A stretch of 64,000 nucleotides of DNA from Macrostomum lignano (GCA_002269645.1 NIVC01001936.1:22763-86762), one strand, 5' to 3'; counted from the first letter of the stretch, positions 6,899 through 52,251 are shown. Notes: generated from the letters alone by a model not told the origin. Made by a program: numbers and translations.

Positions 6899-9605
6899 AT
6901 GGACGCAAAAAAGTTTCTGGAACTGCAAGGCCAAATTAAGCAGAACAATCAGGATTACTTGGAGTTTGTCAGCGAGCTGGACTCTTGGAAGGCCGAGCTC
7001 GATAAGAGACGCGAAAAATCTCTGCTGAACTTGCAGCAGCAGCAGCAACAGCAACAGAATGGCTCCAGCGAGAATCTGCCCCCAGTCAGAAACAGTCTAA
7101 TGAAGAAAAAGTACAAGAAGAAGCCCAAAAGCAAGCAGGAAGCTGCTGAGCAGCAGCAACAACAGAAGAAGAAGATTGCAGCCTACGATTATAAAGCTTG
7201 GGATAAATTCGATGTTGACAAAGCTTGCGAAGAGGTTGACGCCGCGAAGCCAGCCTCCGATGAGGAATACGAAACTGATGAAGAATGGGAAGAGGAGCGA
7301 CGAAAGCAGCTGGCAGAGTCAAAGAAAGCTGCTGGCAATGAGGCTTTCAAAGCTGGCAAATTTGAAGACGCAGTTGAGTTGTACACCAAGGCGACTCAGT
7401 TGAACCCCGAGTCTGCTGTGTACTTTTGTAATCGAGCGATGGCGCTGTTGAAATTGGAGCGATTTGCAGCCGCTGAGGCCGACTGCTGCTCTGCCCTGGA
7501 ATTGGATGCCAAAATGGTTAAAGCTTATTACAGGTGGGCTTATTACATACTAAACATATTTAGTTACAAGAATTGCTAATTTGGTAGCTAAGCCTGTTTA
7601 GATATTTGGTAGCTAAGCCTGTTTAGATATTTGGTAGCTAAGCCTGTTTAGATATTTGGTAGCTAAGCCTGCTTAGATATTTGGTAGCTAAGCCTGCTTA
7701 GATATTTGGTAGCTAAGCCTGTTTAGATATTTGGTAGCTAAGCCTGCTTAGATATTTGGTAGCTAAGCCTGCTTAGATATTTGGTAGCTAAGCCTGCTTA
7801 GATATTTGGTAGCTAAGCCTGCTTAGATATTTGGTAGCTAAGCCTGTTTAGATATTTGGTAGCTAAGCCTGTTTAGAGATTGGTAGATAATCCAGGTATA
7901 TCACATACAAGGCTGACATATCCTTGTTAGCAAAAGCTCCATGGCCTTCAGCACCGAATTCTCTCCACAGACGCGGCCAGGCGCGCCAGAAACTCGGCAA
8001 GCTGCCAGACGCTCTGCGCGACTTAGAAGAAGCCCTGGCCCTAGAGCCCAACAACAAAGCGTTGCAATCGGAGGTGAAACAGCTTCGAATAGATTTGCAC
8101 CCGGAGAAATACGCCACCGGAGAGGTGGAACCAATATTTGATAAGCCAGTTAGCCAGAGATCTCAAAAGCCGCTAGTTCGTGTACCAATTCAAGAGGTGT
8201 CCGCGGTCAAAGCGGCCCAGGTAACACCTGTTGCTACGGCGACTTCAGAACGTACGGCAAAGGATGAATCGAAAACGGTTCAGACGGAGCAGCCAGTATT
8301 AACTGCTGCTGATCAAAGTTCAGCTCAGTCTGGAGTGACACAGTAAGCTGGATTATTTTCTTCAAGTTTCTCTCAAAACAGTTTTGTAGTCAGTGTTATA
8401 CAATCTACCAACAGTATTTCTCTGTAGAATAAGCTTCCAGCTTCCACTGTAGTATAATTAGCTTCCACTGTAGTAGAATAAGCTTCCACTGTAGTAGAAT
8501 AAGCTTCCACTGTAGTAGAATAAGCTTCCACTGTAGTAGAATAAGCTTCCACTGTAGTAGAATAGGCTTCCACTGTAGTAGAATAAGCTTCCACTGTAGT
8601 AGAATAAGCTTCCACTGTAGTAGAATAAGCTTCCACTGTAGTAGAATAGGCTTCCACTGTAGTAGAATAAGCTTCCACTGTAGTAGAATAAGCTTCCACT
8701 GTAGTAGAATAAGCTTCCACTGTAGTAGAATAGGCTTCCACTGTAGTAGAATAACCTTCCACTGTAGTAGAATAACCTTCCAGCTTCCATTGTAGTAGAA
8801 TAAGCTTCCACTGTAGTAGAATAACCTTCCAGCTTCCACTGTAGTAGAATAAGCTTCCACTGTAGTAGAATAAGCTTCCACTGTAGTAGAATAGGCTTCC
8901 ACTGTAGTAGAATAAGCTTCCACTGTAGTAGAATAAGCTTCCAGCTTCCATTGTAGTAGAAGAAACTTCCACTGTAGTAGAATAAGCTTCCAGTTTCCAC
9001 TATCGAAGGCTTCCACTATGGAATCAAAGCTTTGATCTTCCATCTGTGAAAAAGTGTTCAGTGCAAGAATTATGTTTTCATTCCAAAAGAGAGATTTTTA
9101 CCTTAATTTACTTTGCTTACCCTCGCCAATTTCCAGCTCGTCATCCAGCAAGCCGCCAGCTGCCCAGCAGACTCAGCCGGAGCCGCTGCCGGCGCCCCCG
9201 GAGACGCCCTACCAGTTCAAGTCGGCCTACCGCAGCCTGGGCCGCCGCGATCCGCTAGCATTCTGCACCAGCGTGCTGTGCGCCGTGCCTCCAGACCGGC
9301 TGCCGGCTCTGATCGGCGAATCCTTGGAATCCGACGCCCTGCTGGACATGGCCGGCGCGTTCCAGGCTGGCCTGAGCGCCGATCCGGCTATCGCGCCCAG
9401 GGTCTACCAGTGCCTGCGGCTCATCGCTGACAGGGTCAGGCGGTTCGCCACCTGCGTTGCATTTCTCAGCTCCGGCGAGCTGGGTCAGCTGGCCCAGCTG
9501 ATCAGTCAGCTGACTGGCCTGCTGCAGCCTCTGACCGCTGCTGGCGATGCTCAGTACGATTTGACACGGCTGGCCGCTGCCTATGGCGTTCCCCATGCTG
9601 TTTGA
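6899..9605 (+). CDS. RPAP3: RNA polymerase II-associated protein 3 (R2TP co-chaperone, Spaghetti-like), about 491 aa; exons 6899-7533, 7971-8342, 9137-9605
   Basis: N-terminal LELQGQIKQN..LDSW and IAAYDYKAWDKFDVD motifs; TPR triplet (KAAGNEAFKAGKFEDAVELYT...YFCNRAMALLKL...KAYYRRGQARQKLG...ALALEPNN); RPAP3_C-like PETPYQFKSAYRSL...LIGESLESD...RRFATCVAFLS. GT-AG junctions are phase-consistent (2/2, 2/2). Confidence 0.92.
7578..7878. repeat. 25-bp minisatellite (ATTTGGTAGCTAAGCCTG(T/C)TTAGAT), RPAP3 intron 1
   Basis: About 12 tandem copies. Confidence 0.95.
8422..9000. repeat. 21-bp minisatellite (TAGTAGAATAAGCTTCCACTG), RPAP3 intron 2
   Basis: Tandem copies; source of the AYSTTVE/LILLQWK ORFs. 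Confidence 0.95.
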
Positions 9606-10514: not shown

Positions 10515-11483
10515 ATGCCTAAATCTTCCAAACCCAATTCTGTCGAGTCAAACGCCAAAGATAATAACAAAAAAGTGACCAGTGAAAGCCTCGTTGGTGG
10601 AGAAGCTATTTCTGACTCTACTACTAGTTACAGTAGTAGTAGAAGACGTACCTTCGGCGTGACGCCTCGCGATCCAATTCATTCCGAGCCAGCCGATGAA
10701 GCAAACAGTTCGGCTGCAGCTTCAGCTGCGTACGTCTATAGAAAGGGCGACACTCGCAGAGCTGTCCTGTGGCTTGGGGCCATCTTTTCCATGGCCTTGC
10801 TACTCATGTACATCCTCTATTTAAACATGCCGCCATTCACAGCCGAGGAGAGCCAATTGCTTCGATTGCCGGCAACGCTTGACGATGCCAAACAATTAGG
10901 CAATCTGTTGTACAAGTACAAGAGTACTTACTTTGCTCAGGTGCTAATTGGCCTGGCTATTACCTACGTGTTTCTGCAGACATTTGCTATACCCGGGTCA
11001 ATCTTTCTAAGCATATTGTCTGGTTATTTGTTTCCTCTGCCGCTGGCTTTGACTCTAGTTTGCACCTGTTCAGCTATTGGCGCTTCGTTCTGCTATCTAC
11101 TGTCTTACCTGGCATTGAGACCGCTGCTTCACAAACATGTTGCTAATAGAATATCCAGTTGGGCAACCGAGGTAGCTGAGCATCGCGAGCACCTATTCAA
11201 CTATATATTGTTTCTAAGAATAACTCCTTTCCTGCCTAATTGGTTTATTAATTTGGCCTCGCCTATAGTCGGCGTGTCGCTAGTGCCATTTTTTATCGGC
11301 ACATTCTTTGGCGTAATGCCGCCATCTGTCTTTGCTATTCAAGGTGGGCAGACTTTGCAAAAATTGGCGTCAACATCTGAGACAGTCACGTGGCGCAGTG
11401 TCTCCATACTTGCTGTACTGGCTCTGCTGGCCATTGCTCCGGCTGTGTTTAAAAACCGATTGAAGCAGAGGCTAAAGTTTTGA
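10515..11483 (+). CDS. TMEM41B: Transmembrane protein 41B (DedA/VTT family scramblase), single coding exon, 322 aa
   Basis: YVFLQTFAIPGSIFLSILSGYLFP, VCTCSAIGASFCY and FLRITPFLPNWFINLASP motifs, plus C-terminal KQRLKF; multiple hydrophobic helices. Confidence 0.96.
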   Translation: MPKSSKPNSVESNAKDNNKKVTSESLVGGEAISDSTTSYSSSRRRTFGVTPRDPIHSEPADEANSSAAASAAYVYRKGDTRRAVLWLGAIFSMALLLMYILYLNMPPFTAEESQLLRLPATLDDAKQLGNLLYKYKSTYFAQVLIGLAITYVFLQTFAIPGSIFLSILSGYLFPLPLALTLVCTCSAIGASFCYLLSYLALRPLLHKHVANRISSWATEVAEHREHLFNYILFLRITPFLPNWFINLASPIVGVSLVPFFIGTFFGVMPPSVFAIQGGQTLQKLASTSETVTWRSVSILAVLALLAIAPAVFKNRLKQRLKF

Positions 11484-16446: not shown

Positions 16447-16495
16447 ACGGCCAGTTAATCCTACTTACAGTAGTTTCAATAAATTTTAATTCCAG

Positions 16496-17076
16496 TGTCA
16501 GCCGGCTCAGACTTCAGCGTCTCGGCCGTCAGTTTAAAAGCGCAAAAGAAATTAGCCAGCAGGTTTTCCACCCGAAAATGCGCCCGAGTGGTGCTGGACG
16601 ATCTGGCCAGCGGCTTGCTGGACCGGCTGCACAAGCTCGTGTCTCTCTGCCTCAACTCGCGCAGAGACGCGGATAAAACGGTTAAAAATCTCATCAAAGT
16701 GGCAGTTAAAGCCGCCCTGTTGGCCAAGAATGAGCAGTTTAACGACGCCGAATTGGCTATTGGCCGGCAGCTCAATGCCCGACTGCGCCACCTGCTAATG
16801 ACCCTGATTAGTTTCCACCGGGTAGATTTCACCTACGATCGGCAGCATCTGATCGGACTGCTGAACGAGTTCCGCGATCTGCTGGACCGGCTGTTAGGCG
16901 ATCACGTGACCCAGAAGTCGCACGACCGTCTGGCCGATGCGTTTCAATGCCTGACTAAGCCGGAGCTGTTGGACGAGTTGTACGGCGGAGCGGCGCCGGG
17001 GAGTCGGGTTCACTCTGAGATGCAGCTGTTGTGCAGAGACGCCGATCTGTTTCTTGAGCAGCGCTGGTCTGCTTGA
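16496..17076 (+). CDS. TNFAIP8: TNFAIP8/TIPE family protein, main coding exon (first base(s) of the CDS must come from an upstream exon)
   Basis: SLKAQKKL...LDDLASGLLDRL...KNLIKVAVKAALLAKNEQFN...ISFHRVDFTYDR...TQKSHDRL match the TIPE fold. The ORF opens at the acceptor TTTTAATTCCAG (16494-16495); the ORF-track GTG start overlaps that acceptor. Confidence 0.93.
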
Positions 17077-18990: not shown

Positions 18991-19664
18991 GTGACCTTAA
19001 GTCCTCAGATTTATCTCAGCTTGATTTTCTGCAACTATGAAAATCAGTGCCATGCTCCAACAATGTTTTTCCATTTCTACTATCTATTCAGTCTGCCAAT
19101 GATGCACGCAGCGATTTTATTTCAAATATTGGTGCCAATGCAAATTGATCACATATATATGATATTTTATAAATGCGTTTGTTTCTTCCATGGCCTTTTT
19201 ATGGTTAGGGATATATGGTTGCCTCTCAAATGTTTAACATGTTGAGCATGTAAAGTTTCCTTTGCTTTATTTTTATAATATAAATTTATATTGTCGCTAA
19301 TGGCTTCTATATTGTGGTGCGTTTTAAAAACATAATCCATGCCCAGCTCTGAATCCAGTATTTTATCATCTAATATCATTTGTAATTGCTTGCGTCAATT
19401 GTAAAATAGTTTACTGCTACGAGTAAATGGAACATTCAAATACTACATAAATTTTGTTTTACTAAATCACGATCGTAAATATATGTTGCCGCTGCGTTAA
19501 TTTTCCGCGGCAGCGGTTATTGCGGTATTTCTGGCCAATTCGAGCGATTTTTTAAGTCGAATTGCCCAGACCAGTTTTTATCTCTGATAGCTCGTAATTA
19601 TAAACTTTCTCGTTTGTTTCTTGATCTTTTCAATTTGGTTGGCGGGGCAAAGGATTGGTGTGTT

Positions 19665-20960
19665 AAAGTAAGGGAGTGAGGTGGTGGGTAAAGTAGTGAG
19701 GTTGTTGGTAAGGGAGTAAGGTGGTGGGTAAGGGAGTGAGGTGGTGGGTAAAGTAGTGAGGTGGTGGGTAAAGTAGTGAGGTTGTTGGTAAGGGAGTGAG
19801 GTTGTTGGTAAGGGAGTGAGGTGGTGGGTAAAATAGTGAGGTTGTTGGTAAGGGAGTGAGGTGGTGGGTAAAGTAGTGAGGTGGTGGGTAAAGTAGTGAG
19901 GTTGTTGGTAAGGGAGTGAGGTGGTGGGTAAAGTAGTGAGGTTGTTGGTAAGGGAGTGAGGTGGTGGGTAAAGTAGTGAGGTGGTGGGTAAAGTAGTGAG
20001 GTTGTTGGTAAGGGAGTAAGGTGGTGGGTAAGGGAGTGAGGTGGTGGGTAAAGTAGTGAGGTGGTGGGTAAAGTAGTGAGGTTGTTGGTAAGGGAGTGAG
20101 TTTGTTGGTAAGGGAGTGAGGTGGTGGGTAAAGGAGTGAGGTGGTGGGTAAAGTAGTGAGGTGGTGGGTAAAGTAGTGAGGTTGTTGGTAAGGGAGTGAG
20201 GTGGTGGGTAAAGTTAAAGTAGTGAGGTGGTGGGTAAAGTAGTGAGGTTGTTGGTAAGGGAGTGAGGTGGTGGGTAAAGTAGTGAGGTGGTGGGTAAAGT
20301 AGTGAGGTTGTTGGTAAGGGAGTGAGGTGGTGGGTAAAATAGTGAGGTTGTTGGTAAGGGAGTGAGGTGGTGGGTAAAGTAGTGAGGTGGTGGGTAAAGT
20401 AGTGAGGTTGTTGGTAAGGGAGTGAGGTGGTGGGTAAAGTAGTGAGGTTGTTGGTAAGGGAGTGAGGTGGTGGGTAAAGTAGTGAGGTGGTGGGTAAAGT
20501 AGTGAGGTTGTTGGTAAGGGAGTAAGGTGGTGGGTAAGGGAGTGAGGTGGTGGGTAAAGTAGTGAGGTGGTGGGTAAAGTAGTGAGGTTGTTGGTAAGGG
20601 AGTGAGGTTGTTGGTAAGGGAGTGAGGTGGTGGGTAAAGGAGTGAGGTGGTGGGTAAAGTAGTGAGGTGGTGGGTAAAGTAGTGAGGTTGTTGGTAAGGG
20701 AGTGAGGTGGTGGGTAAAGTTAAAGTAGTGAGGTGGTGGGTAAAGTAGTGAGGTTGTTGGTAAGGGAGTGAGGTGGTGGGTAAAGTAGTGAGGTGGTGGG
20801 TAAAGTAGTGAGGTTGTTGGTAAGGGAGTGAGGTGGTGGGTAAAATAGTGAGGTTGTTGGTAAGGGAGTGAGGTGGTGGGTAAAGTAGTGAGGTGGTGGG
20901 TAAAGTAGTGAGGTTGTTGGTAAGGGAGTGAGGTGGTGGGTAAAGTAGTGAGGTGGTGGG
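19665..20960. repeat. 21-bp G-rich minisatellite (GTGAGGTGGTGGGTAAAGTA / GTGAGGTTGTTGGTAAGGGA)
   Basis: Alternating variants; source of the 444-aa repetitive ORF. Confidence 0.95.
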
Positions 20961-21497
20961 GCATGGGAAACATTTTAGGCATGGAGTAAGGTGGCAAACA
21001 TAATTAATGACTGTTATAATTCTATGTACATGAAGTACGAGGGTAAATTTTACTCCTAGTTGTACACATATTTTGAATGTTTGGTACCGTATAATGTTTT
21101 CAACTTATGTATAGATATTACTTTTATGCTTGTGTAATACGGTGTAACTTTTATTCACGAATCCTCTGATCCATGTCTAAATGATTGTTTTTTTACTTCG
21201 AGCTCATACGAGCATTTTACGAGTTTTCGACCGGCTGCACAAATAGCTACAAGTACTATAGCGAATACGCCCATACAAATAACACAGCGATTTAGTTGTC
21301 ACGCCTCTGTGACGTATGAAAGATTTCTCCATTTATTAAAATACGCGACAGAACAGGAAAGCAATAATAGAAACCACATGTGGAAAGTGTGCGCATTCTT
21401 GTGGCTGGTGAGGCTGAGGTTCCCACGAGGTTGGGGCTATAAAACTGTTTCCTCTCTGTGAAAATGGCACATGCATGCAGGCCAGTAATAAGTAGCC

Positions 21498-24059
21498 ATG
21501 GCTCGCAGGAACTCCATCGTAGACAACAGAAGCGGCAATCTGATAGTCACCGGGCCAAGACTTCGTCATGATCAGCATCAACAACAACAACATCGCCTGC
21601 GCGACGGGGTCAGGCCGGGACACGTCAGCTCTCAGGTGAACATGTTCTCCCAGATGATTCGCTCAGCTGGCGAGCTGAGAAGTCCTCGAGTAGCCGGGGG
21701 TAAGCGGCAGCAGCAGAGGTCCAGGAGACCCAGCAGTTCAACTGTGATCGGTTTTGCCGAAGTCGGCCGGCCCGCTAAGCTGCAGGTCGTCAATAGCGAC
21801 TTGTCGATGGGGTCGAAGGGAACCGGCGATCGGGGGGTCTATGCTGCCGACGAGTGGGCGGTGTACGCCGAGGGGACGGAGCCCAAGAAATCCAAGCAGG
21901 AAAGAGGAAGTTCCGATCGAAGGTTTGTGTAAAAATGGACACTGCTATTTTTTAAAGTGCACAATGTACTGTATCATCGGCAAGCTTTTTAATTCGACAG
22001 ATATCTTTCATGCGACTCCTTTGCTCAACACCCACTCCACAACACGCAATATCAGTTCACACCCGAAATATCTTACTCCACGCCAACTACCTCTCTCCAC
22101 GGCCACGCCAACCACCTCACTCCACGGCCACGCCAACCACCTCACTCCACGCTAATCATCTCCACACCCAGTGGTGCAAGCAGGAATGCAAGCGTCAATA
22201 TTTGGTGTCGTTGAGCGATTGGAGCGTGCGCCCCCTGCCCCCGTCTGCGTATGCCACTGACCACACCCACCACCTCACTCCGCACCCACCACCTCACTCC
22301 GCACCCACCACCTCACTCCACACCCACCACCTCACTCCGCACCCACCACCTCACTTAACACCCACCTCCTCACTCAACACCCACCACCTCGCTCAACACC
22401 CACCACCTCACTTAACACCCACCACCTCACTGAAAACCCACCACCTCGCTCAACACCCACCACCTCACTTAACACCCACCACCTCACTGAAAACCCACCA
22501 CCTCACTCATCACCCAACACCTCAGTCCAGACCCACACCAACACACCTTCGCCCAAATTTAATTCTAGTCCATTTGAGTCTAGGGCGCATAATCTCAGTC
22601 TAGTCGATTCACCACTAAACTGTTTATTAAAAAATTCTTTAACCGGCAGTCACCACCAGCAGCAGCAGCAATCTGAACGCTACAAAGCCGACGAGTGGGC
22701 AGTTTACGCAGAGGAGCCGGAGCCCAAGAAATCCAAGCAGGAGAGAGGAAGTTCCGATCGAAGGTTTGAGTAAAAATGTGCCGAAGTATAGGTGTATAAG
22801 TCCATTGTAACATCCGCAAGCCTTTTAATTGAACGCATCCCTTTCATACAACTCCCAAGCCTAACATCCACCCACCACCACGCCACATCATTTTGCATCC
22901 TCCCTCTGACGCCATCAGCCACCTAATTTCACGCCAACCATCTCACTTCACACCCACCACCTGACTCAACACCCACCACCTCACTTCACACCCACCCCCT
23001 CACTCCAGACTCACCACCTCACTTCGCACCCACCCCCTCACTCCAGACCCACCATCTCACTTCGCACCCACCCCCTCACTCCAGACCCACCATCTCACTT
23101 CACACCCACCCCCTCACTTCACACCCACCCCCTCACTCCTGACCCACCCCCTCACTCCAGACCCACCCCCTCACTTCACACCCACCCCCTCACTCCAGAC
23201 CCACCCTACCATCCCATCGCCTGAATATGTCCATAAAGTCTAGTTGATCCATCACTAAACTGTATATTAAAAACCTTCAACCGGCAGTCAGCACCAGCAG
23301 CAATCTGAACTCTACAAAGCCGACGAGTGGGCCGTTTACGCCGAGACGCCTCCATCCCAGACGCCCGACCGCACCGTCCTTCTGCCAGAGCCAGTAGGCC
23401 CCGCTGTTGCCAGGGCTACAACCAAAACAAGCGCCGCAAGAGCAACAACAACATCTTCAGCAGCTTTTGCCCGTCAGCAGCTCTACTCTGAACAGCGACT
23501 CAGACGAGAAGCCATGGAATCGACGGATGGCCGGCCGTCAGTGCTCAATAAATCTTCCTCAGACTACAAAACAGAAGATGACAATAAATTTCTCAAAGAA
23601 GAATGGACAGTCTACGAGACAATTCCGTTGGTAACTGCAGCTGCAGACTCTGGGTTGGACAGAGGCGTCAATGAAGAATTCGACGGAGTAGTTGGTTACA
23701 GAAGATACTTAGCGGACGATGGTGCTCAGTTGAGCTCGAGGAAGACAATGCAGTCTGCTTCTACTCGCGCCAGGACAGCAGGAACTGCGGCTTCGAATCT
23801 CGATGCGGCGAAGGAGTTTGCCGAGCGGAAGTCGCGAGACGGCCTGTCCAGGAGGCGGGTGACGACGCCAGTTCGGCTGCAGAAGTGGACCGAGGTGCGC
23901 GAGCTTGAGACGGTTGAAGAAGTCGACGCTAAGCCTGAATTGCCTACGCCCCGGATGTCGGGCTATGAAGCTGAGGGCTTCATCGTCTGGAGCAGCGGCA
24001 GCGCGTTGAGTCGCATCGCTCTCAGACTCAATCTCCGCTTGGCTACAAGCGCTATCTGA
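21498..24059 (+). CDS. Unrecognised 436-aa protein with repeated (Y/F)x(A/K)(D/E)EW(A/T)VY motif; exons 21498-21922, 22650-22763, 23288-24059
   Basis: ATG in GCCATGG context. Donors GAAG|GTTTGT (21923) and GAAG|GTTTGA (22764); acceptors AACCGGCAG (22649, 23287). All junctions are phase 2 and give one open frame of 1311 nt. No family recognised. Confidence 0.72.
22040..22560. repeat. CCCACCACCTCACT repeats in intron 1 of the orphan gene
   Basis: Reverse complement of the 19.7-21.0 kb repeat core. Confidence 0.85.
22935..23210. repeat. CCCACC(A/C)CCTCACT repeats in intron 2 of the orphan gene
   Basis: Same core as 22040-22560. Confidence 0.85.
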
Positions 24060-24509
24060 CAATGGACGAGATCGATTACCGTAGGACAAACAGTTCGACT
24101 GGAAATATTGTGCATGGTGAGCAGCAACTCTGGCTCGTGTAGGAGCTCAGATGAAGATGGATTTAGACCTATATACAAACTTTATCTAGCATGGAGGCAA
24201 GGTGCGGGTTGGCCCTATTGAGCGCATCTCCGAGCCACTCTACCCCTGAAGGATAGAGAGTTATTAAGCGATTGAAATTGGTAAACTATTATAATCCTGT
24301 GCCTCTTTCACATTCCTGACAGCTTCCTACCAGAGGAGTCCTGACGCGTATTACTACTTCTACTCTGACGAGACTGAGAAACGCCGCGGTCACCGTCGAG
24401 ATCAGAAAACTCCGAAGAGTCGCGTCTACAAGCGAGCTAATTTGAGAAGCTACGAGTTTACTAAATAGATAGTTATATTTGTATTCTGTTGCTGTACTTA
24501 AGTTAATGA

Positions 24510-25292
24510 GTGCGGCTGGGATCGAGGTGGTAAGTGCGGAGTGAGGTGGTGGGTACGGCGTTAGGTGGTAAGTGCGGAGTGAGGTGGTGGGTACGGCGTT
24601 AGGTGGTGGGTGCGGAGTGAGATGGTGGGTACGGCGTTAGGTGGTGGGTGCGGAGTGAGATGGTGGGTACGGCGTTAGGTGGTGGGTGCGGAGTGAGGTG
24701 GTGGGTGCGGAGTGGGGTGGCAAGGACTACTCAAGTAACATATACGAGTATATAGGAAGCTACACTCGAAATCGATGGTAATGTTTTGAAGGCAACTTTT
24801 CGCCGAAAAATACACTACAGAGATCGGAGGTTTTAATTTTTTCAGCACAAAAATTGTTACTGCTTTTGATAGGAGGCAGATCCAGTGTTCATCTTTTGAT
24901 ATGTTGTGCCTTTCTTATTGCTTTATCGATATTCATAAAGCTTTTCGTTCAGAAATAGTTTTAAAGGCAGGTTTCACCGGAAAAATACACTACGGAGATA
25001 GGAAATTTCACGATTTTCAACACGAAAACAGTTATTGGGTCTCTTAACAGTGTCAGAGAAAGTTGCGTCCTTCTACTTAAGTTGTCCTTGTGAGGTGGTG
25101 GGTACGGCGTTAGGTGGCGGGTGCGGAGTGAGGTGGTGGGTGCAGAGTGAGGTGGTGGGTGCGGAGTGAGGTGGCGGGTGCGGAGTGAGGTGGTGGGTGC
25201 GGAGTGAGGTGGTGAGTGCGGAGTGAGGTGGCGGGTGCGGAGTGAGGTGGTGGGTGCGGAGTGAGGTGGCGGGTGCGGAGTGAGGGGGTGGG
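24510..25292. repeat. Two short arrays of GCGGAGTGAGGTGGTGGGT (24510-24720, 25090-25292)
   Basis: Same core family, plus orientation. Confidence 0.85.
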
Positions 25293-26207
25293 TGCGCGAT
25301 TGCTTCACGCTTCCTTTCTCTTTACTGAAGTACTTAATAAAGCAATCATTACAGCAGCAATATTTTACGATATAATACGCGCGCCCGTATATCACCACAG
25401 CACGAAAACTGTGACTTATAACATGTTAATAATGTTTTACTTGCGAAAGCATATATGCTCGTACATGTAAATGTAGTTACATGCTAATTATTATGTCATA
25501 CATTTTTACAATTAGCGTAATGTTAAGTTCTCTCTGGATAATAAATATATCGAAAGTAAATATAATATTTAATATGATATTTGTTTTCATAGTTTTATAT
25601 CACACGAACGACTTTCTTTCAAATACTTTTATTTCTTATTGTTGTCGTACTACTTACAGTAGTAAGCTCAGATATTTAGCGTATCTGAAATTTTAAACTA
25701 CATTCGAATTCTGTGTTTGACCATGTATAAAGAAAGCAAGCGCGTTATTTAGTGTATACAAAATAGTTTATAAAACTGTTTTATAAATTTCTTCAGGTGA
25801 GTATATTTATCTGAATGGCAAAAGTGCACAAATATATTAGTATGACGAAACATGCCAAACCTAAATTTCAGTCTGCACAATGTTTTCATATCACACTTGT
25901 CCATGTTTAAAAATAATAAATAATTACGTTTTTGATATTCCGTATGCTGTTGTAAAACAGTTAAAACTCAATTCTTTGCAATCTCTAAAAAACAACTTTT
26001 ACATGTTTTGTTTAAATCTTCAATGGCAAGTTTCTAATAGTTAGAGGAGGCGGAGCCTTCCAGGGCGCATAAATAGATGACAAACAATAATTTGTTCATG
26101 AAACCACGTGGAGTTCGTCGCTAAGGTTAATGTATTCAAATTAAGCAAGCAAAATTCACCATGCAAAAGCAAAAAAGTGTACAAAATCTGTGTAGGTTCT
26201 TTCAGTT

Positions 26208-27476
26208 TGATCCCCTTCCAGTCTGATCCCCTCCAGTCTGATCCCCTCCAGTCTGATCCCCTCCAGTCTGATCCCCTCCAGTCTGATCCCCTCCAGTCTG
26301 ATCCCCTCCAGTCTGATCCCCTCCAGTCTGATCCCCTCCAGTCTGATCCCCTCCAGTCTGATCCCCTCCAGTCTGATCCCCTCCAGTCTGATCCCCTCCA
26401 GTCTGATCCTCTCCAGTCTGATCCCCTCCAGTCTGATCCCCTTCGGTCTGATCCCCTCCAGTCTGATCCCCTCCAGTCTGATCCCCTTCGGTCTGATCCC
26501 CTTCGGTCTGATCCCCTCCAGTCTGATCCCCTCCAGTCTGATCCCCTCCAGTCTGATCCCCTCCAGTCTGATCCCCTCCAGTCTGATCCCCTCCAGTCTG
26601 ATCCCCTCCAGTCTGATCCCTTCCAGTCTGATCCCCTCCAGTCTGATCCCCTCCAGTCTGATCCCCTCCAGTCTGATCCCCTCCAGTCTGATCCCCTCCA
26701 GTCTGATCCCCTCCAGTCTGATCCTCTCCAGTCTGATCCCCTCCAGTCTGATCCCCTTCGGTCTGATCCCCTCCAGTCTGATCCCCTCCAGTCTGATCCC
26801 CTTCGGTCTGATCCCCTCCAGTCTGATCCCCTCCAGTCTGATCCCCTCCAGTCTGATCCCCTCCAGTCTGATCCCCTCCAGTCTGATCCCCTCCAGTCTG
26901 ATCCCCTCCAGTCTGATCCCCTCCAGTCTGATCCCCTCCAGTCTGATCCTCTCCAGTCTGATCCCCTCCAGTCTGATCCCCTCCAGTCTGATCCCCTCCA
27001 GTCTGATCCCCTTCAGTCTGATCCCCTCCAGTCTGATCCCCTCCAGTCTGATCCCCTTCAGTCTGATCCCCTCCAGTCTGATCCCCTCCAGTCTGATCCA
27101 CTCCAGTCTGATCCCCTCCAGTCTGATCCCCTCCAGTCTGATCCCCTCCAGTCTGATCCCCTCCAGTCTGATCCCCTCCAGTCTGATCCCCTTCAGTCTG
27201 ATCCCCTCCAGTCTGATCCCCTCCAGTCTGATCCCCTGAAGTCTGGACCCCTCCAGTCTGATCCACTTCAGTCTGATCCCTCCAGTCTGATCCCCTGAAG
27301 TCTGGACCCCTTCAGTCTGATCCACTTCAGTCTGATCCCCTTCAGTCTGATCCCCTCCAGTCTGGACCCCTTCAGTCTGATCCCCTCCAGTCTGATCCCC
27401 TCCAGTCTGATCCCTTTAAGTCTGGACCCCTTCAGTCTGATCGCCTCTAGTCTGATCCCCTCCAGTCTGATCCCCA
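26208..27476. repeat. 15-bp minisatellite (GTCTGATCCCCTCCA) downstream of ARHGEF17
   Basis: About 84 copies; source of the [15 protein letters not shown] ORFs. Confidence 0.97.

Positions 27477-27631: not shown

Positions 27632-52251
<24,620 letters not shown>

What the first reader, a model, noticed from the sequence alone, without database searches (positions are those of the whole stretch)
21498..24059. Orphan gene growing by tandem duplication of a symmetric exon carrying an EWxVY motif
Seen: three exons join in frame. The 114-nt phase 2-2 exon 2 (HHQQQQQSERYKADEWAVYAEEPEPKKSKQERGSSDR) is a composite copy of the end of exon 1 (VYAADEWAVYAEGTEPKKSKQERGSSDR) and the start of exon 3 (QHQQQSELYKADEWAVYAETPP). 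The flanking intron sequences are duplicated too (about 21923-22020 vs 22764-22860; 22596-22649 vs 23237-23287). A fourth, more diverged motif (FLKEEWTVYET) lies further into exon 3. Inference: the Trp/Tyr motif is kept while the spacers diverge, as expected for a repeated short linear binding motif in a disordered, possibly lineage-specific protein. I do not recognise the family. Exon 2 is skippable without frameshift, so motif number could vary by splicing.
Basis: partly seen in the sequence, partly recalled or inferred. Interest (0 to 1): 0.72.

Follow-up and report, generated by a model that had tools for sequence, protein, structure and literature searches.

The report
Tandem exon duplication in unannotated flatworm gene
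An unannotated three-exon gene of the flatworm Macrostomum lignano gained its middle exon through one 0.84-kb tandem duplication between two copies of a short Trp/Tyr peptide motif; this is a clean example of a well-known way for repeat proteins to grow, in a gene family seen so far only in this species.

Summary
ATG 21498, exons 21498-21922, 22650-22763 and 23288-24059, GT..AG introns of phase 2, and in-frame joins with or without exon 2 are all confirmed. Exon 2 is the junction product of one tandem duplication: unit 21846-22686 (841 nt) aligns with unit 22687-23318 (632 nt) over its whole length, intron and 19-nt minisatellite included.

The window is Macrostomum lignano contig NIVC01001936.1. 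A second contig carries a 99.86% identical copy with the same three units. No gene is called at the locus on either contig in the listing returned for the NCBI assembly.

The repeat units differ by 6 synonymous and 3 non-synonymous changes (dN 0.03, dS 0.29, p about 0.003). Codon usage favours only the model frame.

The gene is not a strict orphan. It is collinear with the M. lignano protein Mlig023050g2 (709 aa), which has five EEWTVYE-type motifs and VGYRRYL motifs.

Nothing else matched among 1.84 billion representative proteins, Pfam or PDB. The window copy lacks one base at 23977/23978. The other contig reads on to TAG at 24141-24143 and recovers a conserved LGYKRYL. Expression, exon skipping and motif function remain untested.

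The parts
21438..21443 (+). TATAAA box (context GGGGCTATAAAACTG), 55 nt upstream of the ATG. In-frame TAA TAA lies at 21486-21491. The start context is GCCATGG.
   Evidence: read from the sequence; promoter activity not tested
21498..21922 (+). Exon 1 (425 nt, 141 codons + 2 nt). It holds the N-terminal family motifs GHVSSQVNMF and IGFAEVGRPAKLQVV and ends ...VYAADEWAVYAEGTEPKKSKQERGSSDR.
21846..21872 (+). Motif copy 1, ADEWAVYAE (27 nt). Left edge of duplication unit 1.
21846..22686 (+). Duplication unit 1 (841 nt): motif + exon-1 tail + intron 1 + exon-2 head.
21923..22649 (+). Intron 1 (727 nt, phase 2, GT..AG). It contains 25-nt x3 repeats (22078-22151) and a 19-nt minisatellite ACACCCACCACCTCACTCA x14 (22263-22536).
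22650..22763 (+). Exon 2 (114 nt, phase 2-2), the junction product: head copied from exon 3, tail copied from exon 1.
22687..22713 (+). Motif copy 2, ADEWAVYAE. The inferred crossover point lies within it.
22687..23318 (+). Duplication unit 2 (632 nt): motif + exon-2 tail + intron 2 + exon-3 head.
22764..23287 (+). Intron 2 (524 nt, phase 2, GT..AG). It holds a minisatellite of the same family (22937-23206; 19/38-nt period).
23288..24059 (+). Exon 3 as it reads in the window (stop TGA 24057-24059).
23319..23345 (+). Motif copy 3, ADEWAVYAE.
23589..23630 (+). Canonical family motif FLKEEWTVYETIPL.
23688..23711 (+). Partner segment VVGYRRYL.
23977..23978 (+). Site of a 1-nt difference: window GAGGG-CTTC, sister contig GAGGGACTTC. 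It shifts the frame of the last ~27 codons of the window model.
24038..24058 (+). LGYKRYL, a third family-type GY[KR]RYL segment. It is readable only in the frame used by the sister contig.
24141..24143 (+). TAG stop of the frame that is intact in the sister contig (464-aa product).

Best explanation
What it is. The region is a real but unannotated protein-coding gene of Macrostomum lignano (contig NIVC01001936.1, about 44,260-46,905). It is a diverged paralogue of the uncharacterised protein Mlig023050g2.

The family. It is built from an N-terminal GHVSS..F / GF..G+PA+..V region. This is followed by repeated modules with a strand-like motif (hydrophobic)-[FY]-x-x-[DE]-E-W-[TA]-V-Y-[EA], usually followed 25-50 residues later by [VIL]GY[RK]R[YL]L.

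How exon 2 arose (shown). The ancestor of this gene had two exons, with a DEWAVYAE motif on each side of one phase-2 intron. An unequal crossover, or an equivalent tandem duplication, between the two 27-nt motif-coding stretches duplicated about 0.84 kb. The duplicated piece was motif, exon-1 tail, intron and exon-3 head. This made a new 114-nt symmetric exon whose head is a copy of exon 3 and whose tail is a copy of exon 1, with a copy of the intron on each side.

Selection (shown). Since then the peptide has been under purifying selection, with dN/dS about 0.1.

How the protein works (inferred). The motif probably forms a short beta strand. In the old modules it pairs with the GYRRYL strand. 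The three young copies have no partner segment, so they would be free, multivalent docking strands in a region that AlphaFold models as low-confidence coil.

My confidence by part:
- Duplication mechanism: about 0.9.
- Gene functional and translated: about 0.65.
- Strand-docking function: about 0.25.
For: - Gene model and frames.
- Full-length homology of the two units, introns and minisatellite included: exon parts 92-94% identical, intron heads 72%, intron tails 88%.
- Nucleotide homology of exon 1 with exons 2 and 3 starts exactly at GCCGACGAGTGG.
- Selection: 6 synonymous vs 3 non-synonymous changes over about 25 synonymous and 101 non-synonymous sites. Fisher p = 0.002, binomial p = 0.003. 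dS is 0.29, close to the intron-flank divergence of 0.27, and dN is 0.03.
- Codon-usage log-odds are positive only in the model frame of each exon and about 0 in the introns.
- Collinear similarity to P0001: pairwise E = 1e-10, library-wide E = 4.6e-5, shared N-terminal, EEWTVYE, VGYRRYL and EF.ERK..TP.R..WT segments.
- The same three-unit structure is present on a second contig that is 99.86% identical.
- TATA box, GCCATGG start context and an upstream in-frame double stop.
- AlphaFold of the module places strands on KEEWTVYETIP and DGVVGYRRYL with pLDDT about 75. The whole protein has mean pLDDT 44.6 and the repeat region is coil.
Against: - No gene is called at this locus on either contig in the listing returned for the NCBI assembly.
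- No protein from this locus exists among 1.84 billion representatives, so there is no evidence of a transcript.
- The window copy carries a frame-shifting 1-nt difference near the 3' end.
- No AATAAA or ATTAAA lies within 24000-24800, the stretch that holds both candidate stop codons.
- The selection test rests on only 9 substitutions.
- The structural hint comes from a 3-sequence alignment with pTM 0.32.
- The motif's binding partner is unknown.
Confidence: 0.65

Rival explanations
1. The locus is a silent or decaying gene copy (pseudogene or unexpressed relic). The duplication is real but no longer matters for any protein.
For: It is not called as a gene on either contig. No product is found in the protein libraries. 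There is a frame-shifting indel in the window copy. No canonical poly(A) signal was found.
Against: About 1.3 kb of frame stays open across three exons. Synonymous changes exceed non-synonymous ones since the duplication. Codon bias is frame-specific. The sister contig has an intact frame that recovers a conserved LGYKRYL. A TATA box and a good start context are present.
Confidence: 0.22
2. The EEWTVYE-type motif is not a free linear binding motif. It is one strand of a small folded two-strand module with GYRRYL, and the three DEWAVYAE copies pair with each other into a small sheet within one chain. Their role would then be structural rather than docking.
For: The motif and GYRRYL occur together in three modules of the two paralogues. 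AlphaFold places strands on both segments.
Against: The three young copies have no GYRRYL partner. The full-length single-sequence model gives them as low-confidence coil. The module model itself is of modest confidence (pTM 0.32).
Confidence: 0.2
3. The high exon identity relative to the introns reflects gene conversion between the exon copies, not purifying selection on a protein.
For: Short, very similar tandem copies are good substrates for conversion. Exon identity (92-94%) exceeds intron-head identity (72%).
Against: Conversion does not favour synonymous over non-synonymous differences (6:3, against about 1.8:7.2 expected). The intron tail next to the exon is also 88% identical, and dS is close to the intron divergence.
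Confidence: 0.08
4. The tandem duplication is an assembly artefact in a minisatellite-rich region.
For: The assembly shows single-base indel differences between the two contigs, and the locus is full of minisatellites.
Against: Two separate contigs show the same structure with the same spacing: 841 and 631 or 632 nt. The copies differ by 6-28%, which collapse or expansion errors do not produce.
Confidence: 0.02

Closest known systems
Macrostomum lignano hypothetical protein BOX15_Mlig023050g2 (PAA52311.1; UniRef A0A267DSN6). Sister entries A0A1I8IV03 and A0A1I8I4B6 are labelled 'CCDC66 domain-containing'.
   Same: It has the same order of conserved segments: GHVSS..F, GF..G+PA+..V, EEWTVYE..P motifs, [VI]GYRR[YL]L and EF.ERK...TP.R..WT. 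It comes from the same species and has no known function.
   Different: Identity is only 26-33% over the aligned parts. The paralogue has five canonical EEWTVY motifs in one large exon, long ER-rich stretches and a single intron near the 3' end. The window gene has three derived DEWAVYAE copies separated by two introns and no ER-rich stretch.
Tandem exon duplication by unequal recombination, the general and well-described route by which symmetric exons and repeat proteins expand (own knowledge)
   Same: Adjacent similar exons, duplicated flanking intron, identical intron phase, length a multiple of three.
   Different: Here the breakpoints can be placed inside a 27-nt motif-coding repeat on either side of the intron. 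The new exon is therefore a head/tail chimera rather than a copy of a pre-existing exon.
Xin actin-binding repeat (Pfam PF08043; consensus recalled from memory as ..WLFET.PL.)
   Same: A short repeated Trp/aromatic-Glu-Thr-x-Pro-Leu type motif in a protein that is otherwise largely low-complexity.
   Different: The spacing differs by one residue. Pfam gave no Xin match for the model or for P0001 even at E <= 10. This is a resemblance only.

Membership tests
Mlig023050-like EEWTVYE/GYRRYL repeat proteins (undescribed, Macrostomum) | Significant sequence similarity to the only known member | tested here: met
   The pairwise BLASTP E-value is 1e-10. The phmmer E-value is 4.6e-5 against 1.84 billion representatives, with 6 matched stretches.
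Mlig023050-like EEWTVYE/GYRRYL repeat proteins (undescribed, Macrostomum) | N-terminal GHVSS..F and GF..G[RK]PA[KR] segments in the same order | tested here: met
   The invariant columns are G41-S45, F50, G85, F86, G90, P92 and A93.
Mlig023050-like EEWTVYE/GYRRYL repeat proteins (undescribed, Macrostomum) | At least one F.[KR]EEWTVY[ED]..P motif followed by [VI]GYRR[YL]L | tested here: met
   FLKEEWTVYETIPL lies at 23589-23630 and VVGYRRYL at 23688-23711. A second LGYKRYL is readable in the sister-contig frame.
Tandemly duplicated exon | Neighbouring exons and their flanking introns are homologous | tested here: met
   Units 21846-22686 and 22687-23318 align end to end.
Tandemly duplicated exon | Symmetric phase and a length divisible by 3 | tested here: met
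   The exon is 114 nt and phase 2-2, and skipping it keeps the frame.
Tandemly duplicated exon | The exon is included in mature mRNA, constitutively or alternatively | not testable with these tools
   There is no RNA-seq access.
CCDC66 domain proteins (Pfam PF15236) | Match to the Pfam CCDC66 model | tested here: not met
   Pfam gave no family at E <= 10 for the model or P0001, and none at E <= 1 for P0002 or P0003. The UniRef label is carried only by the entries with four ER-rich units.
Xin repeat proteins (Pfam PF08043) | Match to the Pfam Xin repeat model | tested here: not met
   There was no match at E <= 10.
Intron created by a mobile element (introner) | Other copies of the intron ends elsewhere in the genome | tested here: not met
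   The intron heads and tails match only each other in the window and not L001. Only 64 kb plus one locus were searched.

The most novel reading that the evidence does not exclude
The paired EEWTVYE / VGYRRYL segments define a previously undescribed small beta module restricted to Macrostomum. The window gene is caught in the act of amplifying the free 'half module' by exon duplication. Motif valency would then be tunable both by unequal recombination and by in-frame skipping of exon 2.
Probability: 0.15. Interest if true: 0.5.

Novelty: new member of a known kind. Interest (0 to 1): 0.3.

Why it matters
- It is a very clean natural example of how a repeat-bearing protein modelled as largely unstructured gains a motif. 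One unequal crossover between two short motif-coding repeats on either side of an intron makes a new symmetric exon. Breakpoints, intron copies and subsequent purifying selection are all readable from the sequence.
- It adds an unannotated gene and a corrected 3' end to the M. lignano gene set.
- It defines a two-segment motif family of unknown function that could be tested in a tractable flatworm model.
- It does not change any general picture. Exon duplication and repeat expansion in disordered proteins are well established.

Tried and rejected
- Pfam on the model, P0001, P0002 and P0003 gave nothing usable. The only line was DUF512 at E 0.39, which is noise.
- Full HMMER over 1.84 billion representatives found only P0001.
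- A word-indexed search with the module profile A4 found 4 candidates and none scored.
- PDB sequence searches gave only chance hits: Liprin-beta at E 1.8, and protein A fusions at E about 1.
- Literature searches for 'Mlig023050' and 'EWTVY' returned 0 papers.
The exon-3 ORF is not on record.
- Introner or transposon origin of the intron was rejected, because there are no further copies of the intron ends.
- Rfam on 19000-26000 found nothing.
- BLASTP of either alternative C-terminal tail against the P0001 tail could not discriminate them. Both align only over the shared 29 residues. The choice of frame rests on the LGYKRYL motif.
- The CCDC66 and Xin labels were rejected (see the membership tests).
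- Fold search was not run. The only model with usable confidence is a two-strand unit, which would match anything.

Full report
**1. The observation**

The sequence was read at 21200-24400 and spliced in silico.
- The ATG is at 21498. It sits in the context GCCATGG, six bases after an in-frame TAA TAA, with a TATAAA box at 21438.
- Exon 1 is 21498-21922 (425 nt), exon 2 is 22650-22763 (114 nt) and exon 3 is 23288-24059 (772 nt).
- Both introns are phase 2. The donors read AAG|GTTTGTG and AAG|GTTTGAG, and both acceptors read AACCGGCAG|T.
- The three exons give an open 436-aa frame, and omitting exon 2 keeps the frame (398 aa).
- Unspliced read-through stops three codons after the first donor.
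- A log-odds score was trained on three neighbouring genes of the window. It is positive only in the model frame for each exon (0.18, 0.53 and 0.16 bits per codon) and about zero in all frames of both introns.

**2. Where the window comes from**

The 322-aa VTT-domain ORF at 10515-11483 is found exactly in Macrostomum lignano assembly GCA_002269645.1, on two contigs.
- The window is identical to NIVC01001936.1, where window position + 22,762 gives the contig position.
- The contig listings show RPAP3-like, VTT-domain and TNFAIP8 genes upstream.
- No gene is called over the locus studied here, on either contig.

**3. The duplication**

The core GACGAGTGGGC occurs three times, at 21849, 22690 and 23322. 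A global alignment of 21846-22686 (841 nt) with 22687-23318 (632 nt) is collinear from end to end.

| Part of the unit | Identity |
|---|---|
| Exon tail | 92% (71/77) |
| Intron head | 72% |
| 19-nt CACCCACCACCTCACTC minisatellite | about 78-90% |
| Intron tail | 88% |
| Exon head | 94% (48/51) |

- The main length difference between the units is a stretch of roughly 135 nt (about 22125-22260) that is absent from intron 2.
- Upstream of GCCGAC, exon 1 is unrelated at the nucleotide level to exons 2 and 3. Downstream of GCCGAG, exon 3 is unrelated to exons 1 and 2.
- The simplest history is therefore a two-exon ancestor with a DEWAVYAE-coding stretch on each side of one intron.
- One unequal exchange between those two 27-nt stretches would follow. 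This explains why exon 2 is a chimera (head of exon 3 + tail of exon 1) flanked by two copies of the intron.
- The head and tail divergences (5.9% and 7.8%) are compatible with a single event.

**4. Age and selection**

- The copies differ by 6 synonymous and 3 non-synonymous substitutions over about 25 synonymous and 101 non-synonymous sites. This gives dS 0.29 and dN 0.03 (Fisher p = 0.002, binomial p = 0.003).
- The intron flanks have diverged by 0.27, the same as dS.
- All four differences among the three 27-nt cores are synonymous.
- A second contig, NIVC01001767.1 (L003 17147 onward), carries a copy with the same three units and nearly the same spacing: 841 and 631 nt, against 841 and 632 nt.
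- That copy shows only four differences in 2.8 kb. The duplication is therefore much older than the split of these two copies. It is not an assembly artefact.

**5. A correction to the 3' end**

One of the four differences is a single base. The window reads GAGGG-CTTC at 23977/23978 and the sister contig reads GAGGGACTTC.
- With that base the frame continues to the TAG at window 24141-24143.
- The tail then reads ...GYEAEGLHRLEQRQRVESHRSQTQSPLGYKRYLTMDEIDYRRTNSSTGNIVHGEQQLWLV, for a 464-aa product.
- This tail contains LGYKRYL, a further instance of the family segment [VIL]GY[RK]R[YL]L. Chance is very unlikely to produce that in a wrong frame.
- BLASTP of the tails alone could not discriminate between the two frames.
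- I conclude that the last ~27 residues of the window model (FIVWSSGSALSRIALRLNLRLATSAI) are out of frame.
- Whether this is an assembly error or a real allele cannot be decided here.

**6. Relatives**

- Pfam gives nothing for the model.
- The word-indexed search of 5.8 billion clusters and the exhaustive HMMER search of 1.84 billion representatives both return a single protein. It is P0001, M. lignano BOX15_Mlig023050g2, 709 aa.
- The two proteins are collinear: GHVSS..F, then GF..G[RK]PA[KR], then EEWTVYE-type motifs, then [VI]GYRR[YL]L, then EF.ERK...TP.R..WT.
- P0001 carries EQWTVYETLP, EEWTVYDTVP, EEWTVYERIP, EEWTVYH and EEWTVTRQIP. EEWTVYE is therefore the family's canonical form, and DEWAVYAE x3 is a young derived variant.
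- The P0001 gene has one large exon and a single 3' intron. The intron that was duplicated here is not shared with it.
- Sister entries of P0001 are called 'CCDC66 domain-containing' in UniRef, but Pfam finds no such domain at E <= 1. The label is carried only by the entries with four copies of a 19-aa ER-rich unit, whereas P0001 has two copies and is called 'Uncharacterized protein'. I read it as a low-complexity artefact.
- A profile of the EEWTVYE..VGYRRYL module found only four word-sharing candidates in the whole database, and none scored.
- PDB and the literature gave nothing.

**7. Structure and likely mode of action**

- AlphaFold on the single sequence gives mean pLDDT 44.6, with the whole repeat region as coil. 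This is compatible with disorder but is weak evidence.
- With the three-sequence module alignment, it places strands on KEEWTVYETIP and DGVVGYRRYL, with pLDDT about 75 there and pTM 0.32.
- My inference is that the motif is a short amphipathic strand. In old modules it can pair with GYRRYL. The three young copies lack a partner, so they are candidates for intermolecular strand docking, with valency set by copy number.
- This is the least secure part of the account, at about 0.25.

**8. Verdict**

- The duplication and its mechanism are solid.
- The gene is probably functional, but no transcript evidence could be obtained and no gene is called there in the listings returned for the assembly.
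- It is lineage-restricted as far as these libraries go, but it is not an orphan.
- The finding is a neat new instance of a known evolutionary process, in an undescribed family.

Noticed in passing
window 23977-23978 vs L003 about 19627: There is a single-base difference between the two M. lignano contigs. It shifts the frame of the last part of the gene in the window copy. The sister copy reads on to the TAG at 24141-24143 and recovers an LGYKRYL segment.
   Followed up: yes
window 19663-20960, 24524-24724, 25090-25296, 28054-28496: Arrays of the same minisatellite family as in the two introns (core CACCCACCACCTCACTC; 88 matches in the window against 0 expected) flank the gene in the opposite orientation. 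The upstream array has at least 47 copies in the window but 16 in the sister contig, while the two intronic arrays have the same copy number in both contigs.
   Followed up: partly
window 21498-24143; L003 17147-19792: No gene is called at the locus on either contig of GCA_002269645.1, and it has no product in the protein libraries.
   Followed up: yes
window 21774 (L003 about 17423): There is a G/T difference between the contigs inside the conserved GRPAK segment (Ala93 to Ser).
   Followed up: no
L001 3081-5234 vs P0001, P0002: The paralogue Mlig023050 varies in the copy number of a 19-aa unit EDSERRRLAEAEERERRRR. There are 2 copies in P0001 and 4 in the genomic ORF of L001 and in P0002. The UniRef name 'CCDC66 domain-containing' is carried only by the 4-copy entries and is not reproduced by Pfam.
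   Followed up: partly
window 26203-27475: A 15-nt minisatellite (CAGTCTGATCCCCTC x85) produces long ORFs on both strands. One of them scores as 'Extensin-like' in Pfam, which is an artefact of the repeat.
   Followed up: partly
window 43105-47094 (-): An uninterrupted 1329-aa ORF has reverse transcriptase, RNase H, integrase zinc-binding and integrase core domains. This is the pol of an LTR retrotransposon of the Ty3/gypsy type. LTRs and gag were not examined.
   Followed up: no
window 6899-7579, 10515-11483, 16495-17076: The neighbouring genes are an RPAP3-like TPR protein, a VTT-domain (TMEM41/SNARE-associated type) protein and a TNFAIP8-family protein. They occur in the same order on both contigs.
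   Followed up: partly
window 21464-21497: Three upstream ATGs (21464, 21471, 21475) lie between the TATA box and the main ATG. Those at 21471 and 21475 open very short ORFs that stop before the main ATG. The one at 21464 opens a longer out-of-frame ORF that runs past it. Whether any of them is in the mRNA depends on the unknown transcription start or on a trans-splice site.
   Followed up: no
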